Positions 21,711-36,321 of a stretch of 64,000 nt of DNA are shown one piece after another; within the stretch, counting starts at the first letter, position 1; the number at the start of each line of letters is the position of its first letter. Position numbers and translations under genes: made by a program. Source of the stretch: Hyphochytrium catenoides (taxonomy: Eukaryota; Protista; Hyphochytriomycota); assembly GCA_900088475.1 (NCBI GenBank), contig FLMG01003710.1, positions 1 through 64,000 of the forward strand, given 5' to 3'. The notes beneath the pieces were generated by a model. It searched no databases, was not told where the DNA came from, and saw only the letters and a list, made by a program, of their open reading frames with translations.

Positions 21711-24700
21711 ATGTCTTCAGACAAGCATGGCAGAGAACCTCAGTCCGATCACAATGGTACTTCAGAGCTCGTATCTATCCTTCGATCTCCTTAAGTTGGT
21801 CTTATTGACTGCTTCACTTATCTCACCCTTCTCCTCCTTATAAAATGGATTTTGGAGTACTAGCCTCCTCAGTCAGTGTACGTCTGCCGATAGCCATGTG
21901 CCGGTGCCTGCATCCTTCCGTTGCTACGGCAAAGGTTTCTGTTTCAGCCTATTTTTCTGGACGACTGTGGAGAGTGGACTGACGACTTTCTCATATGAAC
22001 AGGAGGCACGTTTGCCCCTACCGCGGCGAGTATCGCAGGAGCTGCTGCCCTTTCGACCGACCAACAGCATCTGCACTGCGGTCAGAATGGTAGTAAAGAG
22101 ATGGATAGCGGGGAATTTTCCTCTCCTCGAGTTCTTAGTTCTCCCTGGGAGTTGGAAGCAGCTGTTGACAGCTCAGTCCCTATTAGGCAGTTAAGTAAAA
22201 AGCAGAGGATTTTGATGATGGCGCAGAGACTCGTAAGGCGGGGGAAAGAGACAGGAAGGGAAGAATCTGGAGGCGCTACTGCAAGAAGCCCTGCCCCGCT
22301 TACTCCGGACCTGACTGGCGAAGCGTCCACTGAAGACGAATTTCAATCGTTCAAGGGTGACATAGTAGTCCCAATCATAGAGGACACAGGGAGCTTTTAC
22401 GATCAAGATGGCGTCTATCGCAAGAGAGAAGATGTATCTAATGATGCGGAATCGGAAGATGGAGGAGGGCCCGATGATCAAGCGGTCTCTAGTCAACCCA
22501 CAGGTGCATTACACCCACCTATCCCCTCGCAGAAGAAGAACGAAAGAGGGCAAAAGCATGAGCAAGAGAAGAATCTTAGCCGTTGGTGGAAAAACTGGAA
22601 AATCGCTGCGGTTTTCGGCATGTTTTGGCTCTTCTTTCTCCGTAAGTCTCATTCTCCTTACTGCATGACGTGCGGTCACCTCTCTTGCGCTCTCGCTCTA
22701 ATAGCTCAGCCTTGATGACAGCAAGATACGCTCACATGTTTTGCTTCTCATCCGCCTCCATATAATTCGTGACTCTTCCTCTCGCACCCGACATCACAAT
22801 AGATGAGGTTTTGAGGTACGTCCATGTTTCAATGGTGGAACACTTGCATGCGCACTGACCTCTGTATACCCCTTTTCCCCTGCTCCCCTACCAAAATGTG
22901 GCCACATTTATACCACCTCAACCTTCCGTGTCCATCACTGCCCTCCTCTTGATTTGGCACATTCGTCAACTTACCTTGCGCAACAGCATAGCTGTGGTCA
23001 TGACTGTATCCTCGCTCGCGCTAAAAGACGCAGTCGGGAGTTTCCAAACTAAGAGCTCGGACGTAATCGCCGGCCTGGCAAAGGATAATGTTCAAGTGCT
23101 GAGTGATAATTTTCAAGGGCTGCGGCAGGTTTTGACCGAGCAGACGCAAAACAACGTCAGCGCTTACATAGTTAGAACAACATATCCCGCCTTCTCAGTC
23201 CGTGATGTAAGACTACACTGGGACCTTCTCGACCTGATGGGAAATGTCCTTTACCCTTCGTATATATTTCTCTGCCGCGGAATTTCATTCTGAAGATGTC
23301 CCTCACCATTGTGAAGTTGTTTTGAGATCGTTCATGATCCCAGGCTTCAAGGCAGTGCAACCTCTCCTCATACTTCTTACTCCCTATTCCCAAAAAGCTT
23401 TCCACGCGTAATGCCCGGCCTACCTCTTACTCTTTCATACGCTTAGGGATTACTGGCGGGACTAGCTACTGCGCCACTTTTCACAAGCTGGACCCAGCTG
23501 ACCCCAACCAACTCACTCTCGTTCCTTAGCCCGTTTATGCAGTTTATTCGGTTTAAAAAGCAGGAGTTTCAGCAGGTCACATATACAATAGGAGTTGGCT
23601 TTGACTCAGGTGAGGGCCTAGTTCCTGTCATTCTTTTCTCAATCCCATGGACCGTCGATCCAACTCCAGTTCGTCTGCTTAAGAAATCTTATTACGGTCC
23701 TTACCATTTGAATGTATCGGGGCCGGAATACTTTTTACTGTTGTTTCTTAACCTGACTGATAAACTCACCGCATTACAGATGGCACCTTCTTTGGCATAT
23801 CTGCCAACAGAAGTAACTTATCAATTTTCGGCCAGACAACTCCAGCTCCTGACTACTTCATGTCGTTGCCAGTGTATACTAATGACCCCAACGGTAGCTG
23901 CACTTCTTTGCCACATGCTCACTTGTACTCCGTTGTCGCTGCTGCTTTCCACTGGACCTCAGACGGCATTGGCCTTAACACTTTCTTCTCCTCCTTCCAG
24001 TGCTTCCTTACTGCAACATACCCAAGATTTTTACGGAAAACAATTACAACGTTTCCACGCCTGGCTGCACCCTTCAGGCTTGGTATTACCAACGTTGTCA
24101 GGTAGCGCCCAAGAGTTAAGATGCCAACTAGTTGGCCTGGTGCTTATCAATTTGTATGACCGTTTGTTCAACCATGATGGGGACAGCTTCGGACAGATCA
24201 AACCTCATGTGATCCCAGCCAACCGCTTCAGAAGATCACTGATTACAATGCTCATGGGCGTGCCTGGTGTAGGTCTCCTTGCTCAGCTACGTGTCATTCC
24301 TTTCACTGCGAGCATAGTCCTATATCTTGTCCACTGATCCCTAAATTACACCTTGTACATCTAGCTATGTCTAAGCGTCTAAAACTCTCCAGATCGTGCC
24401 GTAAGGGAGCTTAACTCACCAGTGCCCGCCGAGGTTGTTACGGGGACTGCAAGACCTGGAACGTACCCGCTTGGGGCTCCCTTCTGGTCCCCAGTGTATG
24501 AGTACGCCTCTGTTTCGGGGCTGGGTATCACGTTCGGAGTGCCTATTATCTCTGGATCTCCCAGTGGCCCTTCTACTTTTCTTGGGGTTGCGTCGTCAGA
24601 CCTCTATCTCGACAACCTCTCCAGCTACATGAGGGCCATTCTCAATGGGACTGTCGTGAAAAATGGCGTGGCTTATATAATGGAACTTAGCACCGTAGAT

Positions 24701-27700
24701 CCTAGCTTTCCCACCAAGCGATATGCTTCCGGAAAGTTGATTGCGAGCTCAGATCTGACCGAGCCTGTCCTGGTAAGTTTGGGCCCTGTCAAGTGATGAT
24801 GTTCAGAGGCATACCTTCTTCGACTATGTAGGAGTGTACTTTACTGTTAAACAGGCTGTGACATAACCTTCCATTGATACCGCTGATTTTAATTGACTTG
24901 CCTCTTCTCCCTGTATCTCTTTGGAACTCTGTCATTCATTTGTAAGGTAACACCGTCGGGTCGAACTCTCGTCAATGCGACCGATAGCAGTAACGATCTG
25001 ATTGCTGGCAGTGCGAACTTGGTGCTTGGAACTTACGGCACGTGGCAGGTAAGTGCATAGACGACAAAGGATCAAAGACGGTAAGGCGGAGTTTTGCCTA
25101 AAGATGGAGAAAGGCTGGGGCGAGGGCGGAAGAGCTATTGCACGATGGGTTTGGTTGAACGTCCACAGCAGCGCTTCTTACCTTTGTCCGGCTGTTCCCC
25201 CCTCTCCTCGCCCTCCCCAGAATCTTTCACTCAATGGTACCGGATCCTATTCGTTAGACGGAGGTCCTACCGTGCCATGTCCACCCATTAAGGAGAGAGT
25301 TGACTCTGATGTTTCTTCGTTCTGTGCATACGTTGAATGGAAAAAATGTGGGTCATGCCATAACCTCCCAGAGATGCGTTTTCCCCCATTAACATCATTA
25401 GATGGAAACTTCTTCTACCAAATTCAAGTGCAGATCCTGCCGTTATCCCTCTACTAGTTCCCGCACCCCCTCGTGCTAGGTGAATACAAGTCAAACTAAT
25501 CTTTCTGTGGCCAAACACAGTTGAGTTCCCTTTAGAAGCCGGTAATGGTTTAGACTGGGCGCTCTTTATGGTGCTGCCAGACACAGACTTCTTGCAGAGA
25601 GCTCGAACTGCAGCTCAAAGCGCTGGGAACCGAATTAACGCGTTGGCAGAGGGTGAGTAGATAATGGAGACTAGCTTTTACTGGAATGAATGCAGAAGAG
25701 ACTAAATTGTTAAGAAGGGAGGAAGGCATGATGGATGGATGCGAAGAGTAGCACACTTAAGAGGAGCAGGAGTTGATGGATGGCGTTGTTAGAAGTTCAA
25801 GCGTTGTGTTCCGTCGCACGCTAGCAGATGTGGGAATGTTATGAAGTCTACTTGTAGGGTACATTTACCAATGTGCCGCTTTTCGTAGACGCGAAGGACG
25901 ATGTTCAGTCCACTTTAGAGTATACCTATATTGTGGCGGCGGTCTGGGTGCTCCTCTCTGGCGGTTTTGCATTCTTGATCTCCTACGGCCTTTCCAAGCC
26001 GCTTAAAGTCCTAGCCGGGGATATGCTTGAGGTTGCCAAACTGAAGTTCGGGTAATGTGTTACTTTTCTGCTCTTCAGCTCTCAAAGCGCTCGGAATGGC
26101 TCCCATCCTCCTTCTTAGCCTTTTGATCAGTCAACCTCTGCCTCTTGACTCTCCCTCTTTCACCTTTTCTTCATTCTCGCAGTGGTTACCTCCATTTGTT
26201 CTTGATTCGCTAGTCTTATAACCCTACCCTATCCTTGGTCTCATAAAGTCTCACTCTTTTTCGTTTCTTTTTCTTCAGCCATAGCAAGCCCGAACTATCC
26301 TCTCGAATTAGAGAGGTCCATGAGATGGGCTTGGCTTACCTGAAAATGAGAGAAGGCTTGGAGGGCTTTGCGCGATTTGTGCCGGAGACTGTAGTGAGGA
26401 GGATTGTCTCCGGAGATAGAAAGGTAGAAGCCTATAGCAGCTACCTTACTCTTCGCTTGGGGTCTTTCTGCACTTTCTCCGCTTCTTTTCTAGTGAGGTT
26501 TCCCTGGTCGGCTTTGCCTGTCCTTCATTGATGTTTGATTGATCATTCTCCGCTAACAACACCTAACAACCACATGACGCAAGGCCTCCAAGTTGTATGT
26601 TACACGTCGAAACGTGACGGTTCTTTTCAGCGATATCAAGAACTTCACCACCATATCAGAGTCAGTACCGCTCTCTGAGCTTATTCAACTCCTTGCCGAG
26701 TACCTAGCCCGCATGGCGAGAATCGTGGAGCGGACACAGGGCACTGTTGGTGAGATAAATCGTAACGATAGTGATAACGGTGTGCAATTCGGGGCTCTTG
26801 CACCTTCTCCACACGAGTCGCCTCAGAAACCTTCTTGACACGTGCCCTATAATCATGCGAAGGCTACCTTGGCAAAGAGAAGGGCCCAAGGGTGCTTGCT
26901 TCTCTAGATTTGACCTCATACCCCTTTCTCTGTTTGACAGGGGATTTCATTGGTGACGGCATTATGGTCTTCTGGAACAGTCCTGATTTGGTTCAAGGCC
27001 ACGCGGAAAAGGCTTGTGAATGCGCACTACTCATGCAGAAAGAGCTGGACAGCTTAAACCAGAGGTGGAGAGAGAGGGGCCTGCCGGCGATTGAAATCAG
27101 GATAGGAATCAACTCAGGAGAGGCGCTGAGCGGGAATATTGGCAGTCCTAACAAGATGAAGGTGCGAAAATACTAATGCGTAGCCTTTCTGTCGTGTCCA
27201 AACAGTCCCATTATACGACAACACAAATATTCAGCCTGCACTCGTCTGAGACTAACTCTACTGCCTCTGTGCGTGCCTTGGTTATTGTGCCTCTAATGCT
27301 TATCTACTTCTCTCCCCTTTCATCTTCCGGTCTTGCGATATAGTTCGGTGTGGTTGGAGACACAGGTAAGCTGAGTCTGTTGCCCACGTCATACGCATGC
27401 AATCGACTTCTAACTCGCCTTCTCTTCGTTGCCTCACACGCCATAGTGAACACAGCTAGTCGAGTAGAGAATATTAACAAGTACTACGGGACCAACACAC
27501 TCATTACGGAGGCTACACGCGTAAGAATCAGTGGATTCGTTGTCCGTCCGGTGGATCGTGTCAGAGTAAAGGGTAGGGCTGGCTATACAGAGGTAAGAAG
27601 CCATTCATAATGTAAAGGTTAGATGGAAAGCTAGTTCTCGGCCTCGTTGCTGGATTGTAGACTTTTAATTTGTGCTTCGTTCGTATACTCCGCACACAAC

Positions 27701-28199
27701 GTATACCATGGCCTTTGGCTGGTCTGTTCGCTCGTCGGCTTGCTGGATTTATCACTACTTAAAAATCCCTGTTTCTTGTCCAGCTTTACGAGCTTGTAGG
27801 TCACCAGTCAGAGGCTTCTGCAGCGGAGACCAAGCTCTCAGCTGTGACCGCTGAGGCATTTCAGCTTTATCTGCATAGAAAGGTGAGATGGATCCATTTA
27901 TTTTTGTCAGACTCCATCGCTATCGCCCATATTCCCCTGAGAAGCGGTATTCGGTACTTTTGCGCCGTTGCCTGAAGCTTCTTCTTAGCATCTTCATGTG
28001 GAGTTCTCTGACACGCTATCTGTCTCTCTTTTGGGTTTGGGCCGCCTAGTTCTCCGGCGCTTTAGCAATGGTAGAGGCTGCACTGGAAGACTATAAGGAG
28101 GATGGTCCACTTTCGAAGCTCCGTGAGCACTGCCTTGCGCTTATGGATACGCCTCCCCCTGCAAACTGGGATGGCGTCACGACGTTCCATGAAAAGTAG
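21711..28199 (+). CDS. Receptor-type class III nucleotide cyclase A (TM-dCache-TM-HAMP-cyclase-helical C-tail), many exons
   Basis: TM segment near 22600-22990, Cache-like FWSPVYEY..GITFGVP..GVASSDL..GKLIASS..GLDW, second TM plus SKPLKVLAGDMLEVAKLKF..SRIREVHEMG (HAMP), FARFVP, VTVLFSDIKNFTTISE, GTVGDFIGDGIMVFWNSP, IRIGINSG, GDTVNTASRVE, RVKGR and PPANWDGVTTFHEK*. The ATG at 21711 is inferred from a phase-1 first intron that is also present in the paralog. Confidence 0.88.
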
Positions 28200-29194
28200 A
28201 CAACCTGGAGGCAAATTTTACGTATTCTATCGTGCTTCTACTTTGGGTCTAGATTGCGACTTCGGTTCAAGTTCCTAGGTCGTGAGGGACAACGATTGTC
28301 ATTTCGCATACTCTTGTATCGGGATTCTCTCCCTTCAATCTCCTCTTATCAGATAGAGACAACCTGTTGGGCTTGCTGCCCTTGGGGTCAGTAGCTCGGC
28401 ATGATCTGTAAATTATGTATAATAGCTCTTTAAAACGTGATTGAATTAGCTTGTCGTTTTGACAAGCGCATTCCAGCAAGGGCTTGGAAAAATGAATGCG
28501 GTGAGAGAGGCTTTTCATAGTAACTGTCATCAAAGCAGGAAGAGCACCGGAAGGACGAGTATATACGCTTTTCGAAAACCAGTGCGTGGTGGTGGCTCCT
28601 TGGAGGGAAAAGGAGAATCTCTACACGTAGAGTAACATGGATACTTGTCAGTTCCTATTTAGCTAGGCAGGTCTTGGGCTAGGTAGACCGAAAGCTGACA
28701 GTAATATCTTGTCTGCACATCCATCTTTCTTCGCCAGCTTTTCGTTATGTCAGAACTTGCCTAGCTGAGCTTCTACGTCGTGAGCACTAGGCGACTCATT
28801 GGGTCACTAGCTGGCTTATCAAGAAGGGTCATGGTGGCAGACACTGGTCCTTCTACCATGTGCTCTGTACGAAGAATAAATTATCGCTTATAACCTATTG
28901 CAGCCCGATCTCTGCAATACCAAAAGCAGATGAGCCTCCTGAAGCTAAGTAAGGACATAAATAAGACGATCACACGCATAATTCAAACATTGGCCAGCAA
29001 GTAAACCCCAATATGTTGCAGTCACGGGGAGAAAGGTTCATATAGGCCATGAGTCACTTGGCGGGGCATCCACTCTACTTCCACTCCAGGAAAACTCGAA
29101 GGTTCAGAGCCATAGGATGCAGACAATAATGACGGACCACAGGAAAAGACGAGCAGAATGACGACACGAATGCTAGACAGCTGGTCAAGCAGCA

Positions 29195-32100
29195 CTACTT
29201 CTCATGAAACGAAGTAGCGCCGTCCCAGTTCTTTGGAGGAGGATTAGCGATCAGCTTCTTGCAGTGCTCTCGCAATTTCCACAGGGGCCCGTCGGCTGCA
29301 AACCCAGATACAGCGGCCGTTTCTGCCACCTTCAACGCTTCAACAAACTAGATATAAAGCAAGGACAAGGGACTATGATGTTAGATCTGGTATGCAGTCA
29401 GCACCGAGCAATTGACAGAGGTATAAAGATAGAATAAGAAAACGATAGCCCCTAGCGAGAAAGAGGGGTAGGGGCCAGACGACAGGCGCATGTAACTATT
29501 ATTTCCCCATTTATATGTACCTGTCCCTGAAGGTAGAGCTGAAAGGCCTTAGTAGTCACAGCAGCCAACTTTAAATCAGTCTCCGACGCTTCAGCTTGCC
29601 GTGCCATTAGTTCATAGAGCTATGGAAAGATGTCGAGAAAAGGCAGGCACCAGTTTAGTAACAAAGTAACACTCTCTAATAATGTTTGAGGGCAACCAGG
29701 AGCCAATTCGTTATTGACAAACGCCGGAACCGCATCTTCCCTCAAAGCATTAGCAAAAGGAGGTTCGTCAAAGAGCTATTAGGAGCAGGACTTCTTACCT
29801 CTGTGAAGCCGGCCCTTCCTTTAACTCTCACCCGATCGACGGGACGGACAATGAAACCTTTGATTCTTGATCGTGTGGCCTCGGTTATTAGCTTGTTGGT
29901 CCCATAGTACTTGTTGATATTCTCTACTCGACTAGCTGTATTCACTAACGAACGGAAGAGAAGGAGGAAGCTGAGCGTGGACTGTATACCTGGCCTCAAG
30001 AGCAAAGAAAGAAGACACAGCAAGGGCATGGTTGATCAAACTCTCCTAGCCGCACGGCAAATGCATCTATGTATACACAAGCGAAAGACCCTCAAAGAGC
30101 AGCCCTACCTGTATCCCCAACAACGCCAAACTGTTCCAGGGTTTAGATATAGGCATGTGGTATGTTTGGAGAAGGGGCGTCGGACATCATGAAGGAGTGA
30201 CAGCAGTGTGTTAGAACGTCAAGACAGAGCTAAGCGTTATGTTAAGGTCTGAGGACAATGAGTAGTTTTTCGTCTCACTTTTCTCCCTACTACTGCTCAA
30301 AAAAGGCAGCATGGCCCTCTCCCACCTGCCGATAGTTGTCTTACCTTCATCTTATAGGGACTGCCAATGTTGCCGCTAAGAGCGTCTCCTGAGTTAATCC
30401 CAATTCTGATCTCTATCTCAGGTAGGCCCTTTTCCTTCCATTTCTTGTTCAGGCTCTCCAACTCCTTTTGCATCAGCAATGCGCACTCGCAGGCCTTCTC
30501 CGGATGTCTGCGCACCAACTCGGGGCTATTCCAGAAAACCATAATGCCATCGCCAATAAAGTCACCTTGGTCGACGAGCGGGTGCGAATAGAGGATTGAG
30601 ATAACGGAAGAGGAGAGGTAGAGGGTCAAGCTTTATACAAAGAACTATGGGAGGGAGGTCCTGAGTCCAGAGATCCCTCCGTCTATAAGTGCCTCCTCTT
30701 ACCCACAGTGCCTTGTGTGAGCTCTACTATCCTGCCCATTCGCGCGAGGTATTCAGCGAGCAGTTGGATAAGTTCAGAGAGAGGTATGGCTTCCGAAATG
30801 GTCGTGAAGTTCTTTATGTCACTGAACAACACAGTCACATTTCGGCGAGTCACGTAGAGCTTGGATGCCTTCATGGGATAAAAGCATCTCAGAGATCACA
30901 GGCTAAGCAACAGCGAAGTTGAAGAGGCAAGCTTTACTCAGTCACACCAAGAAGCTGGTTTGTCTCGCTAGGGCTAGCACCAATTGGTCTCTCGTTGCAC
31001 ATACTCCAGACCGCCGAGAAGATTGGCTCTTCCTCACCTTTCTATCTCCTGAGACGATCCTTCGAACGACGGTCTCAGGCACAAAACGCGCAAAGCCCTC
31101 AAGACCTTCTCGCATGTTCAGGTACGCTGAGCCCATCTCATGCACTTCCCTGATGCGGGATGAGAGCTCGGGCTTCACATCCCTAACTCGTTGATAGCAT
31201 TGAGAGGCTCATGATGAAAATATGGATAAAGGACGAGGAGGTACTGTAGCAATGACGCAGGTAAAGGTGGAAGAAAGAGTTGTTCGGGGTTCGCGGACAC
31301 GATAGGCACCCGTAGAGTGGGAGATGGGTTTTGACAACAGGCGCTGCCGATATGACGACTATGAAGCCAGTGTGCTTACCCAAATCTGAGCTTGGCGACG
31401 TCAAGCATATCGTTTGCTAGCACCTTCAGGGGCTTTGACAAGCCATAAGAGATGAGAAAAGCAAATCCTCCAGAAAGCAGGACCCATGTACCGGCAATCA
31501 TCAATGTTCGCTTGACGCTACCCGCGATGTCTTCCTGAGCGTCTAAAAAAGGGATGGAAATATGTAAGCAAGCTCACAGAGTTCATCATCTCTGATCTGT
31601 CCCCACGTCTTGTCCCTTCCTCATGTTCGTCGTAGCTGACCTCTGCTGATGAATCCGCTCACTACCACCTAACCCACTTCATTCTGTCCAACTTTAAAGC
31701 TTACTTTTTCCTAATATCTCAATAGTGGTTTGCGCGTGATTGGCTGCCTCCTTTGCCTGCGCCAGAAACTCCGTGTCTGGAAGGACGATAAAGAGGACCC
31801 AATCTAGTCCATTACCTGCTTCCACTGGCAATTGGACTACGAAAACGTGGTAGTGGCCATAGCAACAAGTCAGGATAAGGGGCAAGGGAGACTGAGAAAA
31901 CATAGAGAGATCAGAGAAATCAGTGCCGGAAGGTATAAAACAATAGAGGCAAAGAAGATGGAGGAGCTCTCAGTCGCTCCACTGGCAAGGACTAATGGCA
32001 TAATAAGGAATCGCAGAATATTAACAGATAGCAGTGGAGGAAAGTATGCATTGGTAGCTTTAGACCCACGTCTGGTCCACCGAATAAAAGCGCAATACGA

Positions 32101-35100
32101 AAGATTGGAAGGGGATCCGATTCTGTCTATGACTGGCTCGCATTGTGTTGCTGGGCCTCGTTCTAAGGAGTAGGAAGCGGTGCCATTCTCAGGAACGCCC
32201 TGCGATGCACAAGGTCAAAAGATCAGGAGACCCACGCATACAGAGACACCAACTTCCCGAAGGGTGATGAGGTCTTTGTAGCTCTCTGTTATCATGAAAC
32301 TATCCTACCGAAATCAGTCAATTTCTTCATAATGTCTCTCAACTTAATGACGTCGCCAGGTCACACAGCGCGACCCAATTCTCAACCCATACGGTTCCTG
32401 CGAAGTTATTTGTACCTGCCAGTTCCCGTCATGCATGTTGAGCACCATACTCGCACTGCTGGCGATGAGACTGTTGCTGCTCTCAGTTGCATTGGGGAGG
32501 GTCAAGCCGCCACCCGCTGTTGCCTGGGTGAAAGAAAAGTTAGTTGAAAGATTGCTACAATGAAAGATAAACCGCCACCGTCGCTAGTACAGTTGTAGAT
32601 CGCTCAGAGAGTTCAACGTGCTTCTACTAGCGGTTGAAAGGGAGTTCCGGACAACTTGTCTACCAACTACTTCTTTTCTCGTAGCCTCCAATAGGTTAGT
32701 TTTGCCATTTGCAATGTCCTCACGCGAATCTCTTACTCGTATATATAACTTACCACGACACCTTGGGTCACATCAGAGCTTGCTATAAGCTTGCCAGATG
32801 CAATTCTAAGAGAGGGATAATGCGGCTCTACTGTGGTCAGTTCGACGATGAAAGCCACTCCGGTCTGTACGATCCTTCCGTCAAGAATACCCTTCATGTA
32901 GGCTGACAGGTTGTCTAGGTAGAGGTCAGAGGAAGCTACACCCACAAAGGTGGACGAGGGTCCTGGCGAGGAAGAGATGATGGGCACGCCGAACGTAATG
33001 CCCACCCCGGTGGCAGAGGCATACTCATAGGAAGGGGACCAGAAAGGAGCCCCAAGAGGATACATCCCCGGCGTTGCCGTGCTGCTCACCACTTGAGCAG
33101 GGGTGGGCGTGTTCAGTTCCCGGACTGAGATATCTATTTATAAGGGGAAACGGCGTCGCGTCAGAGCTATATCATAACCTCAGGAGAGAAAGGTAAGGAG
33201 ACTACATCCATTGCATACAGACAGGATGACCAAGGAAACTTGTTAGTAGTGGACAATGAAGCCAAGCGCACTGAAAAGAGATTTGACTCATATCAGTCCC
33301 CACAACCATTGTCAAGAAATGACAACACGAGGATGATATCAAGCATGTCTGTGTCTTGTGACTCCAAGCTGATGAAAGTAAGGGTACCACGAAAAGAATA
33401 GGATGTAAAAAGGTGAACCTACACCAGGCGCGCTCGTGCACATTATACTTCGAAACCTTAAGGACGGGCTGATTGGGGTCACAACGAGTCTCATCTCTAA
33501 GCAGCTAGAGGTTTCAACGATTAGTGAGTTTGGATGGGGAAGAAGAGGGGATCGTGGTGAAAGAACTGAAAAAAAGGGTAAGCCGTTGACACCATCTTCT
33601 TGTCCTCCATCCTACCTGACATCGCTGGTAGTACCAAGCTTGGTCCTTGCAGCCTCGCGTGGAGGCGTTGTATTTCACCCCGGTATACTCTTCTGGTATG
33701 TTGCAGAAAGGCGCACCTGAATGGCAAAGAGCATTCCCTCAGCGCCATTTACAAAATATAAAAGCAGCAGCGTAACAATATGGCTTACGGTTAGGGTCAT
33801 CAGTGAAAACAGGAAGGGACATAAAGTATTGGGGCGCCGGCAGTGTCTCCATTGATATGGTTGAATTGCTTCTATTCGCCGAGATACCGAAGAAGGTGCC
33901 ATCTACACCAACAAAAAAAAGTTGATAAGGTAATGGTGTTGAGCCCAGTTATAAAGCGATGGATAGGGGAAGAAGGGCAATATTAGCAAGCATGACCAAT
34001 CAAAGTCAGGACGTAATATGCATGAATCTATGATAAGCGCTCTAAGCGGCTAGCGGAAAGTCAAAATTGTAGTGATGAAGCCGTTTCCACCTGCATCAAA
34101 ACCGACACCAATCTTCACGGTCGCCTCTTGGAACTCTTGCTTCTTATACCGGATGTACTGCATGTAGGGGTTGAAAAATGAGAGGGAGTTCTCTGGGGTA
34201 AGCTGTGTCCAACTGGTGTAGAGAGGCGGCGATGCCAAACCAGACAGAATGCCCTAAAGCAGAAGAAGAAAATAGAGGCGTAGGTGTTCGTAAGATGGAA
34301 AGCTCCTCCGAGTCGCGCATTTGGGGGCAACCATTGCTGTGTCCTGGGCAAGCTAGCATGCTATGCCGCTAATAAGAACGAGCTAAATGATGACGAGTTC
34401 TATTCTTTATCGGCTTCCACAACTCGTGAAAAGATAAAAACATCCAGCTTAGTAAGACGAGCACGAAGTCATAGTAGACAAGACTTGAGATTGACGGTGT
34501 TTCACGCCCTTGTATTCGCCTGTAAGTTTGTCCTACTCCACCACAGGATATATCGTATAGTGAGAACTTACATCTCTGATCGAGTAGGCCGGATAGGTCG
34601 TCCTCACAATGTAGGCGCTAACATTGTTTCTGGTTTCATCAGCCAACACCTCTTGAAGCGCCTGAAAGGTCTGGTTCAATATCTGGACATTATCCTGGGA
34701 TAGTGTCCTCAGAACCGATGTACTATCGTCCTCAAAGTTCTGGACTGCGCCAATTAAAGCGTACGAAGATACTGAGAGAGTTACAGCAATGCTGTTGAAG
34801 AGGCAAAGGAATCAAGGAGGAGGAGTGTGAGATGTCAGCGTAATCATTGACAGTTAGAAAGAGGTGGTAGGGAGACCTCCCCATTTGTCCAACTAGGTCC
34901 CATTTACGACGGACACGACGAAGAGTGACGAAGTGAAAGTGACAGGAAAGGCTGACCACAAAGGTATCATTGGGTGTGCAAAATATAGTAAGTAAGGCAG
35001 AGGTCAGTTAGAGCCAAATAGAGTCGATCAAAGAAGGCTCTTACCTTACAAGCTCGTCTGTTGTCAAGGATTATTGTGCCCGCACATTGCAGGTCAATTA

Positions 35101-36321
35101 GTAGAGAAGGAGAAGGAAACATCCGTCAACAAACAGTTCCATTGACTGCATAGATGAGTGAACTGAAGAATACTTACGCAGGAAAAAGAGCCAGAACATC
35201 CCAAACAAAGCATTAATTTTCCAGCTCTTCCACCAGCTATTCACGCTCCTTCCCGGCTCCTCAACCCATTTTTTCTTCTTTGGATGCCCCCCCTCTGCCT
35301 CCCCCGGAGTCCGTGCGGCAGAAGTTGGCGAGAATATAGCTGCAGGAGGCGAAGCAAGATCCACCGCAGAGTCATCTATATCCGCGCTCGATCTTGTTGA
35401 TTCAGGTTCTCCCTTTCTATATATCCCGTCCTCATCATAAAAACTCCCTGTGTCTTCAATGATAGGCACCTCAAAATCCCCTTGGAAGGAAAGGTAAGGA
35501 TCCTGGCGTCTGGAATACTCCTCGTCTGTCTTGTCAGGAGTGAGAGGACTAGGACTAGTATTTTTGCTAGTGCCTTTTCCTTCCGGATCGTCGTCATGCC
35601 TATCCTTTCGCCGTCTCACAAACCTATGTGCCATCTTCAGCAGCTGTGTCTTTGGCGGAAGGCTGCTAGCGTTTCCATTCTCATCTCCACCTACTTCCTC
35701 CCAAGGGGAGTCTACAATCAGGGGAGACCGCGATTCCACACTGTCTAGCTCTTGCTCGTCAGTCGTCTTTCTCTTGACGTCCGCTGATTCCGGCTTCCTG
35801 GTTGAGCTGCTGCGGGCGGATGAAGCAAAGTCTTCCTCCCAGAAGGGAGGACTGCCAAGACTAGTACTCGCTATATAATAGAGGTATGGTGAGTTCTTTG
35901 CTCCTCAGACAGGCTCGCACCAAAGTGCACAGGAGTAGTAAGAAAGTTGACAGCAACAAACACGAAGAGACAAAAGAAGAAAAGAAAGAGAAAGAGAGAG
36001 AGAGAGAGAAAGCGAGAGGAAAAGAGAGAGAGAGAGAGAGAAGAGAGAATAGCGACAGAGAGAAAGAAAGAGAGAGAGAGAAGAGAGAATAGCGACAGAG
36101 AGAGAGAGAGAGTGAGCGGGAGTTATAGAGGCATGAGACGAAGGAGACTGATAGTCAGAAAAGTAACAAGAATGTGAGAAAATGAGCAACCGCAAGGTCA
36201 TCTACGAAGGCACGCTTGAGGATCATCGGGTCGATGAAATGAAGATCGACAAAAGTCTACCTTCACTCTCTATGGAAGGAGCTCGAGTTTTTCTTAATAG
36301 CTTTCCTCGTGAAAAGGACAT
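29195..36321 (-). CDS. Receptor-type class III nucleotide cyclase B, inverted paralog of cyclase A
   Basis: Same motifs and matching intron positions as gene A (VPIIEDTGSFYD, FGMFWLFFL, GAPFWSPSYEYAS, SDIKNFTTISE, GDFIGDGIMVFWNSP, NTASRVENINKYYGT, NWDGATSFHEK*). First exon MSFSRGKLLRKTRAPSIESE at 36321-36261; stop at 29195-29197. Confidence 0.88.
35965..36112. repeat. (GA)n-rich tract with a 40-bp internal duplication, in intron 1 of cyclase B
   Basis: aagagagaatagcgacagagaga occurs at 36041 and 36081 within GA runs. Confidence 0.85.

What the first reader, a model, noticed from the sequence alone, without database searches (positions are those of the whole stretch)
26941..30570. Both cyclases carry a non-canonical Asp/Gly purine-specificity pair
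Seen in sequence: both paralogs read GTVG-D-FIGDGIM and KMKF-G-VVGDTVNTASR, with both metal-binding Asp residues (FSDI, IGDG) and the N..R transition-state residues intact. Established: adenylyl cyclases have Lys plus Asp/Thr at these two positions (DKFIGD, YTVIGD), animal guanylyl cyclases have Glu plus Cys, and the cyanobacterial guanylyl cyclase Cya2 uses Glu plus Gly. Inference: these are active homodimeric enzymes on a bacterial AC-like scaffold that probably make cGMP or another non-cAMP cyclic nucleotide, and would be mis-annotated as adenylate cyclases.
Basis: partly seen in the sequence, partly recalled or inferred. Interest (0 to 1): 0.72.

Follow-up and report, generated by a model that had tools for sequence, protein, structure and literature searches.

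The report
Protist receptor cyclases with Asp/Gly pocket
Two neighbouring genes of a fungus-like protist encode membrane receptor enzymes that make a cyclic-nucleotide messenger, and their base-reading pocket carries aspartate and glycine instead of the usual cAMP-type residues. The same pocket is conserved in an unstudied enzyme family found in many protists, so the product may well be cGMP, but nobody has measured it.

Summary
Two old tail-to-tail paralogs (A on +, B on -) encode membrane receptor proteins ending in a class III cyclase domain. Canonical GT-AG splicing, identical exon lengths in both copies and gapless alignment to transcript-derived homologs put Asp at the Lys (purine-specifying) position. 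They also put Gly at the Asp/Thr position. All catalytic residues are intact.

The Gly codon lies in a 22-nt micro-exon that all five paralogs of this genome keep.

The pair is a family trait. D/G relatives occur in a diatom, a choanoflagellate, Rhodelphis, Picozoa and Mesostigma. Their closest kin are dinoflagellate proteins with Glu/Gly, the pair of the proven guanylyl cyclase Cya2. A tree built without the two columns joins D/G, E/G and D/T proteins in one clade in which every member has an acid at that position. Bacterial K/T cyclases lie outside it.

An acidic pocket argues for GTP. No enzyme with Asp here has been assayed in any paper I found, so cGMP is the best guess (about 0.5), not a result.

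The scan has already noted this family on other DNA of the same genome (s1-338274, s1-333912). No RNA run was listed, so splicing rests on comparison alone.

I rate it a new variant of a known kind, of moderate interest.

The parts
22368..26051 (+). Gene A, upstream coding blocks. They encode an N-terminal cytosolic part, a first membrane helix (WWKNWKIAAVFGMFWLFFL), an extracellular Cache-like sensor, a second membrane helix and the first HAMP-like helix. Exon borders here are approximate.
   Evidence: Ten blocks conserved with gene B at 69-80% DNA identity, each with an open frame in both copies. Only a sub-threshold dCache_1 match was found, and in the diatom-like relative P0153 (E 1e-4). 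No Pfam hit on the window exons themselves.
26279..26423 (+). Gene A exon for the second HAMP-like helix and the cyclase transducer element (..GFARFVPETVVRRIVSGDRK).
   Evidence: Canonical splice sites and the same length (145 nt) as in gene B.
26584..26749 (+). Gene A cyclase exon 1. It holds the first metal-binding Asp (FSDI, codon 26632-26634) and ends QGTV plus the first base of the Gly codon.
   Evidence: PF00211 match of 29 bits against a cut-off of 21.9. Aligns to CyaC, CyaB and Cya2.
26941..27161 (+). Gene A cyclase exon 2. Asp at the Lys/Glu purine-specifying position (codon 26943-26945). Second metal-binding Asp in IGDG (26955-26957). Phosphate-binding Arg in EIRIGINSG.
   Evidence: PF00211 match of 30.1 bits. 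Best solved relative is Cya2 (2W01, E 1.3e-11), with the Asp aligned on the Cya2 Glu.
27344..27365 (+). Gene A 22-nt micro-exon encoding FGVVGDT. Gly at the Asp/Thr/Cys specificity position (codon 27347-27349).
   Evidence: AG/GT flanks. The same micro-exon is present in all five paralogs of the genome.
27447..27592 (+). Gene A cyclase exon 4. Transition-state Asn (27449-27451) and Arg (27461-27463) in VNTASR, and Lys of VKGRAG.
27784..28199 (+). Gene A last two exons (27784-27882 and 28050-28199, stop included). They encode the end of the cyclase core (LYELVG) and a conserved C-terminal tail ending ..NWDGVTTFHEK.
   Evidence: The tail motif is shared with bacterial and protist relatives.
29195..29619 (-). 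Gene B last two exons (29619-29521 and 29347-29195, stop included).
29799..29944 (-). Gene B cyclase exon 4 (VNTASR ... VKGRAG).
30109..30130 (-). Gene B 22-nt micro-exon encoding FGVVGDT. Gly codon 30127-30125.
30345..30565 (-). Gene B cyclase exon 2. Asp codon 30563-30561, followed by FIGDGIM.
   Evidence: PF00211 match of 29.1 bits..
30703..30868 (-). Gene B cyclase exon 1 (FSDI ... QGTV plus G).
   Evidence: PF00211 match of 27.4 bits..
31038..35469 (-). Gene B upstream part: the HAMP/transducer exon 31182-31038, a HAMP exon ending at 31380, and the conserved sensor and N-terminal blocks up to about 35469. Borders of the upstream exons are approximate.

Best explanation
Genes A and B are intact, anciently duplicated genes for membrane receptor cyclases. 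The layout is a cytosolic N-terminus, a membrane helix, an extracellular Cache-like sensor, a second membrane helix, a HAMP-like linker, a class III catalytic domain and a conserved C-terminal tail.

Each chain carries every catalytic residue, so two chains should form a symmetric dimer with two active sites. This dimerisation is inferred from the family, not tested.

The proteins belong to a eukaryote-wide clade that descends from bacterial class IIIb cyclases. In this clade the adenine-reading Lys has been replaced by an acid: Asp in most lineages, Glu in dinoflagellates. The second specificity residue is usually Gly.

A carboxylate at this place can accept the two hydrogen bonds offered by N1-H and N2-H2 of guanine and cannot donate to N1 of adenine. 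Gly leaves room for the base to sit deeper towards the shorter Asp. The most likely reaction is therefore GTP to cGMP, switched by a ligand bound outside the cell.

Shown here: the gene structure, the residues, their conservation and the phylogeny. Inferred: dimerisation, activity, the product and ligand control.
For: Splice model and residues.

All seven functional residues are present in A and B (signature D-D-D-G-N-S-R-K).

Purifying selection: dN is 0.086 with synonymous sites saturated and introns unalignable.

Best solved relative of the exon with the Asp is the guanylyl cyclase Cya2, with Asp on its Glu.

D/G is kept in 5 of 5 paralogs. It also occurs in Rhodelphis, Picozoa, Salpingoeca, Mesostigma and a diatom.

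In a careful tree without the two specificity columns, 11 D/G and 14 E/G rows (13 from the dinoflagellate clade plus the unnamed metagenome protein P0004) form a clade with support 98/97. The whole acidic clade of 35 rows has support 92/93, with K/T bacteria outside.

Asp and Glu swap in orthologs that are 91% identical.

Literature: guanylyl cyclases have Glu plus a variable second residue, including Gly (PMC4215837, PMC6592433). The Glu to N1/N2 contact is the main GTP determinant (PMC7384201). Cya2 E488K alone gives an adenylyl cyclase (PMC5995499). A bacterial cGMP cyclase, PucC, also places Glu there (bioRxiv 10.64898/2026.08.12.744502).
Against: No cyclase with Asp at this position has a measured product in the papers I could search.

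Asp is about 1.3 Angstrom shorter than Glu and might not reach guanine. It could instead accept a bond from the adenine N6 amine.

The Tyr before the transition-state Arg, which strongly raises Cya2's guanylyl cyclase activity (cited in PMC4215837), is Ser here.

From my own knowledge, in some mycobacterial cyclases (Rv1900c with Asn/Asp, Rv0386 with Gln/Asn) the pair does not dictate specificity.

No RNA run was listed, so expression and splicing are not shown directly.
Confidence: 0.5

Rival explanations
1. They are still adenylyl cyclases. The bacterial IIIb scaffold binds ATP mainly through the hydrophobic pocket, and the Asp carboxylate accepts a hydrogen bond from the adenine N6 amine, as Asp/Thr does from the other side in ordinary adenylyl cyclases.
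For: The closest relatives outside the acidic clade are K/T adenylyl-type enzymes. The related D/T clade keeps the adenylyl-type Thr. Specificity in class III enzymes is set during catalysis rather than binding, and pairs are not always decisive (PMC7384201; Rv1900c from my own knowledge). The Cya2 Tyr is missing.
Against: Lys is invariant in all 230 K/T rows and 37 K/S rows of the sampled relatives, yet it is absent from every member of a well-supported clade, which points to a changed constraint. Asp exchanges with Glu, the guanylyl cyclase residue, and never with Lys inside that clade.
Confidence: 0.25
2. They are dual-specificity or promiscuous purine cyclases, making both cAMP and cGMP with the ratio depending on metal or pH. 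The short Asp and the empty Gly position give only loose base reading.
For: The Ma1120 K/D-to-E/G(Y) mutants became equally specific for both substrates (PMC4215837). Cya2 binds both nucleotides with similar affinity (same paper, citing Rauch 2008). Gly gives no base contact.
Against: Strict conservation of Asp or Glu over long evolutionary distances suggests a defined role.
Confidence: 0.15
3. They make another cyclic nucleotide (cUMP, cCMP, cIMP), or they act mainly as regulatory or heterodimer partners rather than as autonomous enzymes.
For: The pair is undescribed. The genome holds two degenerate paralogs with complementary defects that would need partners.
Against: Pyrimidine cyclases restrict the pocket with bulky residues, Tyr/Asp/Arg or Phe/Arg/Gln (PMC11224242; bioRxiv 10.64898/2026.08.12.744502), whereas Gly enlarges it. 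A and B keep every catalytic residue.
Confidence: 0.1

Closest known systems
Cya2 of Synechocystis PCC 6803 (PDB 2W01), a homodimeric bacterial guanylyl cyclase with a Glu/Gly pair
   Same: It is the best solved relative of the exon that carries the Asp (47 bits, E 1.3e-11). It has an acid at the first specificity position and Gly at the second. It is a homodimer type, sits behind an extracellular sensor and transmembrane part, and has a C-terminal extension.
   Different: Asp instead of Glu. Ser instead of the Tyr that boosts Cya2's guanylyl cyclase activity. The sensor is Cache-like rather than CHASE2. The genes are eukaryotic and intron-rich. The bacterial CHASE2 E/G proteins in my tree form a separate clade inside the K/T bacteria, so the acid probably arose independently. 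Cya2 itself was not in the tree.
Bacterial class IIIb receptor adenylyl cyclases (CHASE2-, dCache- or HAMP-linked; for example CyaB of P. aeruginosa 3R5G and CyaC of Spirulina 1WC0)
   Same: Overall architecture, transducer element, catalytic core and C-terminal ..WDGV..K tail. They are 40-48% identical in the core.
   Different: They have Lys/Thr where these proteins have Asp/Gly.
Dinoflagellate Glu/Gly receptor cyclases (Polarella, Gymnodinium, Abedinium), which are unstudied database entries
   Same: They are the nearest clade to the D/G proteins, sitting with them in one well-supported clade (98/97). They share the motifs MKFG..GD.VN and FWN.P.
   Different: Glu instead of Asp. The neighbouring pocket residues also differ (AEILGDGLL against GDFIGDGIM).
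Diatom bifunctional guanylyl cyclase/phosphodiesterase induced by sex pheromone (Seminavis robusta, PMC4726125)
   Same: A two-helix membrane cyclase of a stramenopile, called a guanylyl cyclase from sequence alone. A relative in my set (P0076, Asp/Thr) has the layout dCache, cyclase, PDEase_I.
   Different: There is no phosphodiesterase domain here. I could not link P0076 to the published diatom protein, and that protein's product is also unmeasured.
Mycobacterial cyclases with non-canonical pairs (Rv1900c with Asn/Asp, Rv0386 with Gln/Asn). This entry is from my own knowledge and was not checked here.
   Same: The Lys is replaced in an otherwise intact class III enzyme.
   Different: Those carry amides rather than an acid, remain mainly adenylyl cyclases, and are single lineages rather than a wide clade.

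Membership tests
Class III nucleotidyl cyclase catalytic domain (Pfam PF00211), homodimer type | Profile match above the curated cut-off | tested here: met
   Exon-wise scores are 29.0 and 30.1 bits (A) and 27.4 and 29.1 bits (B), against a cut-off of 21.9. The genome scan agrees.
Class III nucleotidyl cyclase catalytic domain (Pfam PF00211), homodimer type | Two metal-binding Asp, transition-state Asn and Arg, and phosphate-binding Arg/Lys, all in one chain | tested here: met
   FSDI, IGDG, VNTASR, EIRIGINSG and VKGRAG are present in both copies.
Class III nucleotidyl cyclase catalytic domain (Pfam PF00211), homodimer type | Forms a head-to-tail dimer with active sites at the interface | not tested
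   Inferred from the family.
Class IIIb adenylyl cyclase (Lys/Thr) | Lys four residues before the second metal Asp | tested here: not met
   Asp in A and B. Spacing to CyaC and CyaB places it on their Lys.
Class IIIb adenylyl cyclase (Lys/Thr) | Thr (or Asp) seven residues before the transition-state Asn | tested here: not met
   Gly, encoded in the micro-exon.
Cya2-type guanylyl cyclase (Glu/Gly) | Glu at the first specificity position | tested here: not met
   Asp aligns with the Cya2 Glu. The change is conservative but it is not the defining residue.
Cya2-type guanylyl cyclase (Glu/Gly) | Gly at the second specificity position | tested here: met
Cya2-type guanylyl cyclase (Glu/Gly) | Tyr before the transition-state Arg, which raises guanylyl cyclase activity in Cya2 | tested here: not met
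   Ser (NTASR) in A, B and nearly all relatives. The role of the Tyr is as cited in PMC4215837.
Cya2-type guanylyl cyclase (Glu/Gly) | Makes cGMP from GTP | not testable with these tools
   Needs an enzyme assay.
Animal-type guanylyl cyclase (Glu/Cys) | Glu plus Cys (or Ser/Ala) pair | tested here: not met
   The pair here is Asp/Gly. These structures are much weaker PDB matches (RhGC 27 bits, sGC beta 20 bits).
Pycsar-type pyrimidine cyclases | Pocket narrowed by bulky residues (Tyr/Asp/Arg or Phe/Arg/Gln) in a small soluble defence protein | not tested
   No residue-level alignment to PycC was made. The architecture (membrane receptor) and the Gly argue against membership (PMC11224242).
dCache_1 sensor domain | Profile match of the extracellular region | tested here: inconclusive
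   No Pfam hit on the window exons. The relative P0153 gives dCache_1 at E 1e-4, below the cut-off. The D/T relatives match dCache_1 at E 8e-9 and 4e-9, also below the 45-bit cut-off.

The most novel reading that the evidence does not exclude
Asp/Gly marks a biochemically distinct class of eukaryotic receptor cyclases. Its product or selectivity would differ from both the Lys-type adenylyl and the Glu-type guanylyl enzymes: for example a strict preference for another NTP, or a metal- or pH-switched purine choice. That would add a new specificity code to class III cyclases and a new messenger source in diatoms, choanoflagellates and relatives.
Probability: 0.1. Interest if true: 0.85.

Novelty: new variant of a known kind. 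Interest (0 to 1): 0.5.

Why it matters
The two-residue 'specificity code' is used everywhere to call cyclases adenylyl or guanylyl from sequence. The published code has Lys for ATP and Glu for GTP.

Here an Asp variant is fixed in a clade that spans stramenopiles, choanoflagellates, red-alga relatives, Picozoa and a green alga. It exchanges naturally with Glu. One assay would say whether Asp should be added to the guanylyl code.

If these are guanylyl cyclases, many protists gain a family of ligand-gated receptor cGMP sources that current annotation leaves generic or names 'adenylate cyclase'.

There is also a practical warning. The second specificity residue sits in a 22-nt micro-exon that gene predictors may miss.

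Tried and rejected
RNA evidence: the look-up of sequencing runs listed no RNA run for 26200-31300. Splicing therefore rests on paralog and homolog comparison.

Joined spliced proteins were built only inside local scripts, for alignment, trees and dN/dS. That joined step (Pfam, PDB or structure prediction on the full cyclase domain) was left out, and exons were searched one by one by reference.

Pfam on the sensor and HAMP exons gave nothing significant.

I tried to tie the dCache-cyclase-phosphodiesterase relative P0076 (Asp/Thr) to the published diatom GC/PDE. The word search returned only unnamed relatives, so there is no link.

Literature searches for a characterised cyclase with Asp at the Lys/Glu position found none. 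The Cya2 structure paper (PMC2572937) is not held.

I considered a shifted alignment in which the Asp would match the Asp that precedes Lys in the bacterial 'DK' motif. I rejected it because the spacing between GTV and GD is identical and the alignment is gapless.

I considered pseudogenes and rejected them on open frames, intact splice sites and dN far below dS.

The FWN.P motif is not a marker of the eukaryotic clade, because bacterial K/S and K/T proteins have it too.

Complex prediction and structure prediction were not run. Homodimerisation is a family property, and the tools do not report pocket geometry.


Full report
**What is there**

The window is eukaryotic DNA with many short introns. 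Its assembly has 61 Mb in 4759 pieces. That fits the published Hyphochytrium catenoides assembly of 4758 scaffolds plus a mitochondrion, with a mean intron of 208 bp (PMC5795050). The match is an inference, not a proof of identity.

A DNA comparison of the two halves of the region shows 15 collinear conserved blocks. They link 22368-28199 on the plus strand with 35469-29195 on the minus strand. These are two paralogous genes lying tail to tail, A and B. Each block has one frame that is open and similar in both copies.

**Gene model of the cyclase half**

I read the DNA, placed the exon borders, then joined and translated them in a local script.

| Exon | Gene A | Gene B | Length (nt) |
|---|---|---|---|
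| HAMP / transducer | 26279-26423 | 31182-31038 | 145 |
| Cyclase 1 | 26584-26749 | 30868-30703 | 166 |
| Cyclase 2 | 26941-27161 | 30565-30345 | 221 |
| Micro-exon | 27344-27365 | 30130-30109 | 22 |
| Cyclase 4 | 27447-27592 | 29944-29799 | 146 |
| Core end | 27784-27882 | 29619-29521 | 99 |
| Tail (with stop) | 28050-28199 | 29347-29195 | 150 / 153 |

- Every intron between these exons is GT-AG.
- Six consecutive exon lengths are the same in both genes.
- The introns differ in length and align at only 40-59%, close to noise.
- Over the cyclase coding sequence dN is 0.086, and synonymous sites are saturated (the Nei-Gojobori estimate fails).

So this is an old duplication, and both copies are held by purifying selection.

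**The two residues**

- In both genes the first cyclase exon ends ..QGTV plus one G. The next exon starts with two bases that complete a Gly codon, followed by Asp-Phe-Ile-Gly-Asp-Gly-Ile-Met.
- The Asp codon is 26943-26945 in A and 30563-30561 in B.
- The second cyclase exon ends ..Lys-Met-Lys. The 22-nt micro-exon adds Phe-Gly-Val-Val-Gly-Asp-Thr, and the next exon continues Val-Asn-Thr-Ala-Ser-Arg.
- The Gly codon is 27347-27349 in A and 30127-30125 in B.

**Are these the specificity positions?**

Exon-wise searches of solved structures answer this.

- The exon that begins with the Asp is most similar to the guanylyl cyclase Cya2 (2W01, 47 bits, E 1.3e-11). Its Asp is aligned on the Glu of EFMGDG.
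- In CyaC (1WC0) the preceding exon ends at chain residue 72 and the Phe after our Asp matches residue 75. The Asp therefore falls on residue 74, the Lys of the 'DK' motif.
- The same arithmetic in CyaB (3R5G) gives its Lys.
- For the second position, the 6SIR alignments of the two flanking exons leave exactly the eleven residues that the model supplies. The Gly is therefore seven residues before the transition-state Asn. From my own knowledge that is the place of the RhGC Cys; the alignments shown do not display that residue.

A 25-sequence alignment with transcript-derived homologs is gapless over both junctions. No alternative canonical acceptor exists near the site, and homologs from transcriptomes read GTVGDFIGDG and MKFGVVGD without interruption.

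**Catalytic competence**

Both proteins keep the following residues:

- the two metal Asp (FSDI, IGDG);
- the Asn and Arg of VNTASR;
- the Arg of EIRIGINSG;
- the Lys of VKGRAG.

All sit in one chain, which is the arrangement of homodimeric class III enzymes. Dimerisation itself was not tested.

**A family trait**

The genome holds three more copies with GDFIGDG and the same micro-exon, on contigs C3158, C133 and C2901.

A full-library search with the Asp exon found 15,860 relatives. Of the best 150, a motif scan assigned 54 to Lys/Thr, about 34 to Glu/Gly, 7 to Asp/Gly and 10 to Asp/Thr.

| Pair | Named sources |
|---|---|
| Asp/Gly | Rhodelphis marinus, a picozoan, Salpingoeca urceolata, Mesostigma viride, a diatom transcriptome (MMETSP0786) |
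| Glu/Gly | Dinoflagellates: Polarella, Abedinium, Gymnodinium |

I built a careful maximum-likelihood tree of 75 catalytic domains with the two specificity columns removed.

- Eleven Asp/Gly and 14 Glu/Gly rows form one clade with support 98/97.
- A wider clade of 35 rows has support 92/93, and every member has Asp or Glu at the Lys position.
- Bacterial Lys/Thr and Lys/Ser enzymes lie outside it.
- Asp and Glu interchange at least three times inside the acidic clade.
- They interchange once more between two bacterial-type proteins (compact gene layout on a metagenome contig) that are 91% identical over their full length.
- The bacterial CHASE2 Glu/Gly group is a separate clade inside the Lys/Thr bacteria.

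**What this says about the product**

Published work gives the following picture.

- Characterised guanylyl cyclases have Glu at the first position and a variable second residue (Cys, Ser, Thr, His, Ala, Gly) (PMC4215837, PMC6592433).
- In the GTP-bound RhGC structure only the Glu contacts the base, at N1/N2. The second residue mainly shapes the pocket (PMC7384201).
- In Cya2 the single change Glu488Lys converts the enzyme into an adenylyl cyclase (PMC5995499).
- A newly described bacterial cGMP cyclase again places Glu at that site. Pyrimidine cyclases instead narrow the pocket with Tyr/Asp/Arg or Phe/Arg/Gln (PMC11224242; bioRxiv 10.64898/2026.08.12.744502).

An acid that exchanges with Glu and never with Lys, next to a pocket-widening Gly, is therefore best read as a guanine-reading site.

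The reservations are real.

- Asp is shorter than Glu.
- No enzyme with Asp at this position has a measured product in the papers I could search.
- The Tyr that boosts Cya2's guanylyl cyclase activity is Ser here.
- Some mycobacterial enzymes ignore their pair (my own knowledge).

My odds are about 0.5 for a cGMP-preferring enzyme, 0.25 for cAMP, 0.15 for dual specificity, and 0.1 for something else or a mainly regulatory role.

**Sensor part**

The upstream exons encode two hydrophobic helices that flank a region with Cache-like sequence features. Pfam gives no significant hit on the window exons. It gives only sub-threshold dCache_1 matches in relatives. 'Cache-like' is therefore a weak call.

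**Relation to earlier scan notes**

The scan has already followed up other members of this family on other contigs of the same genome (s1-338274, s1-333912, and s1-371164 for a Glu/Gly copy). It reached a similar 'guanylyl-like pocket, unstudied protist family' reading. I used those notes only as leads.

The points established here on this window are:

- the splice-level proof;
- the micro-exon;
- the mapping to solved structures;
- the tree without the trait columns;
- the Asp/Glu interchange.

**Verdict**

This is a new variant of a known kind: a conserved, undescribed Asp/Gly specificity pair in an unstudied eukaryotic receptor-cyclase family. Its product can be settled by one ordinary enzyme assay.

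Noticed in passing
window 27344-27365 (+) and 30130-30109 (-); also L006/L015, L007/L011, L008: The second specificity residue is encoded in a 22-nt micro-exon (FGVVGD plus S, T or A). It has canonical AG/GT flanks and is conserved in all five paralogs. Automatic gene models may skip it and so lose or shift the active site.
   Followed up: yes
L007/L011 (G000 contig C133) and L006/L015 (contig C2901): Two further Asp/Gly paralogs carry complementary defects. C133 has Thr for the transition-state Asn (VTLASR). C2901 has Gly for the first metal Asp (FSGI). Together they could form a heterodimer with one active site, like the C1/C2 halves of mammalian cyclases.
   Followed up: partly
L001 (G000 contig C4243:250473-253961): An intron-free cyclase with a Glu/Gly pair (VDEIIGDG, KYGVVGN), but with Ser for the Asn and Lys for the Arg (VSIAAK).
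   Followed up: partly
L003/L016 (G000 contig C1912): Tandem cyclase domains of another type, with Ser at the second specificity position (FSLFGDTVNTASRM). They may belong to the P4-ATPase guanylyl cyclase known from alveolates and some stramenopiles (PMC13466520). If so, the organism probably already uses cGMP.
   Followed up: no
P0076 / L017: An Asp/Thr relative fuses dCache_1, cyclase and a class I cyclic-nucleotide phosphodiesterase in one intron-free 1112-residue protein. Its source organism is unknown (assembly GCA_020064125.1).
   Followed up: partly
P0208 and P0178 (L018): Two bacterial-type HAMP cyclases are 91% identical and differ by Asp versus Glu at the Lys position, both with Ser at the second position. 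This is a natural pair for testing whether Asp and Glu are equivalent.
   Followed up: partly
window 22368-26051 and 31380-35469: If the sensor is a true dCache_1 domain, these receptor cyclases would be exceptions to the statement that all eukaryotic dCache_1 proteins carry a VWA insertion (PMC8915833).
   Followed up: no
window 27784-28199 (+), 29619-29195 (-): The C-terminal tail ends in a motif (..PP..NWDG....K) shared with bacterial CHASE2 and HAMP cyclases. In Cya2 the C-terminal extension is needed for full activity (PMC5995499).
   Followed up: no
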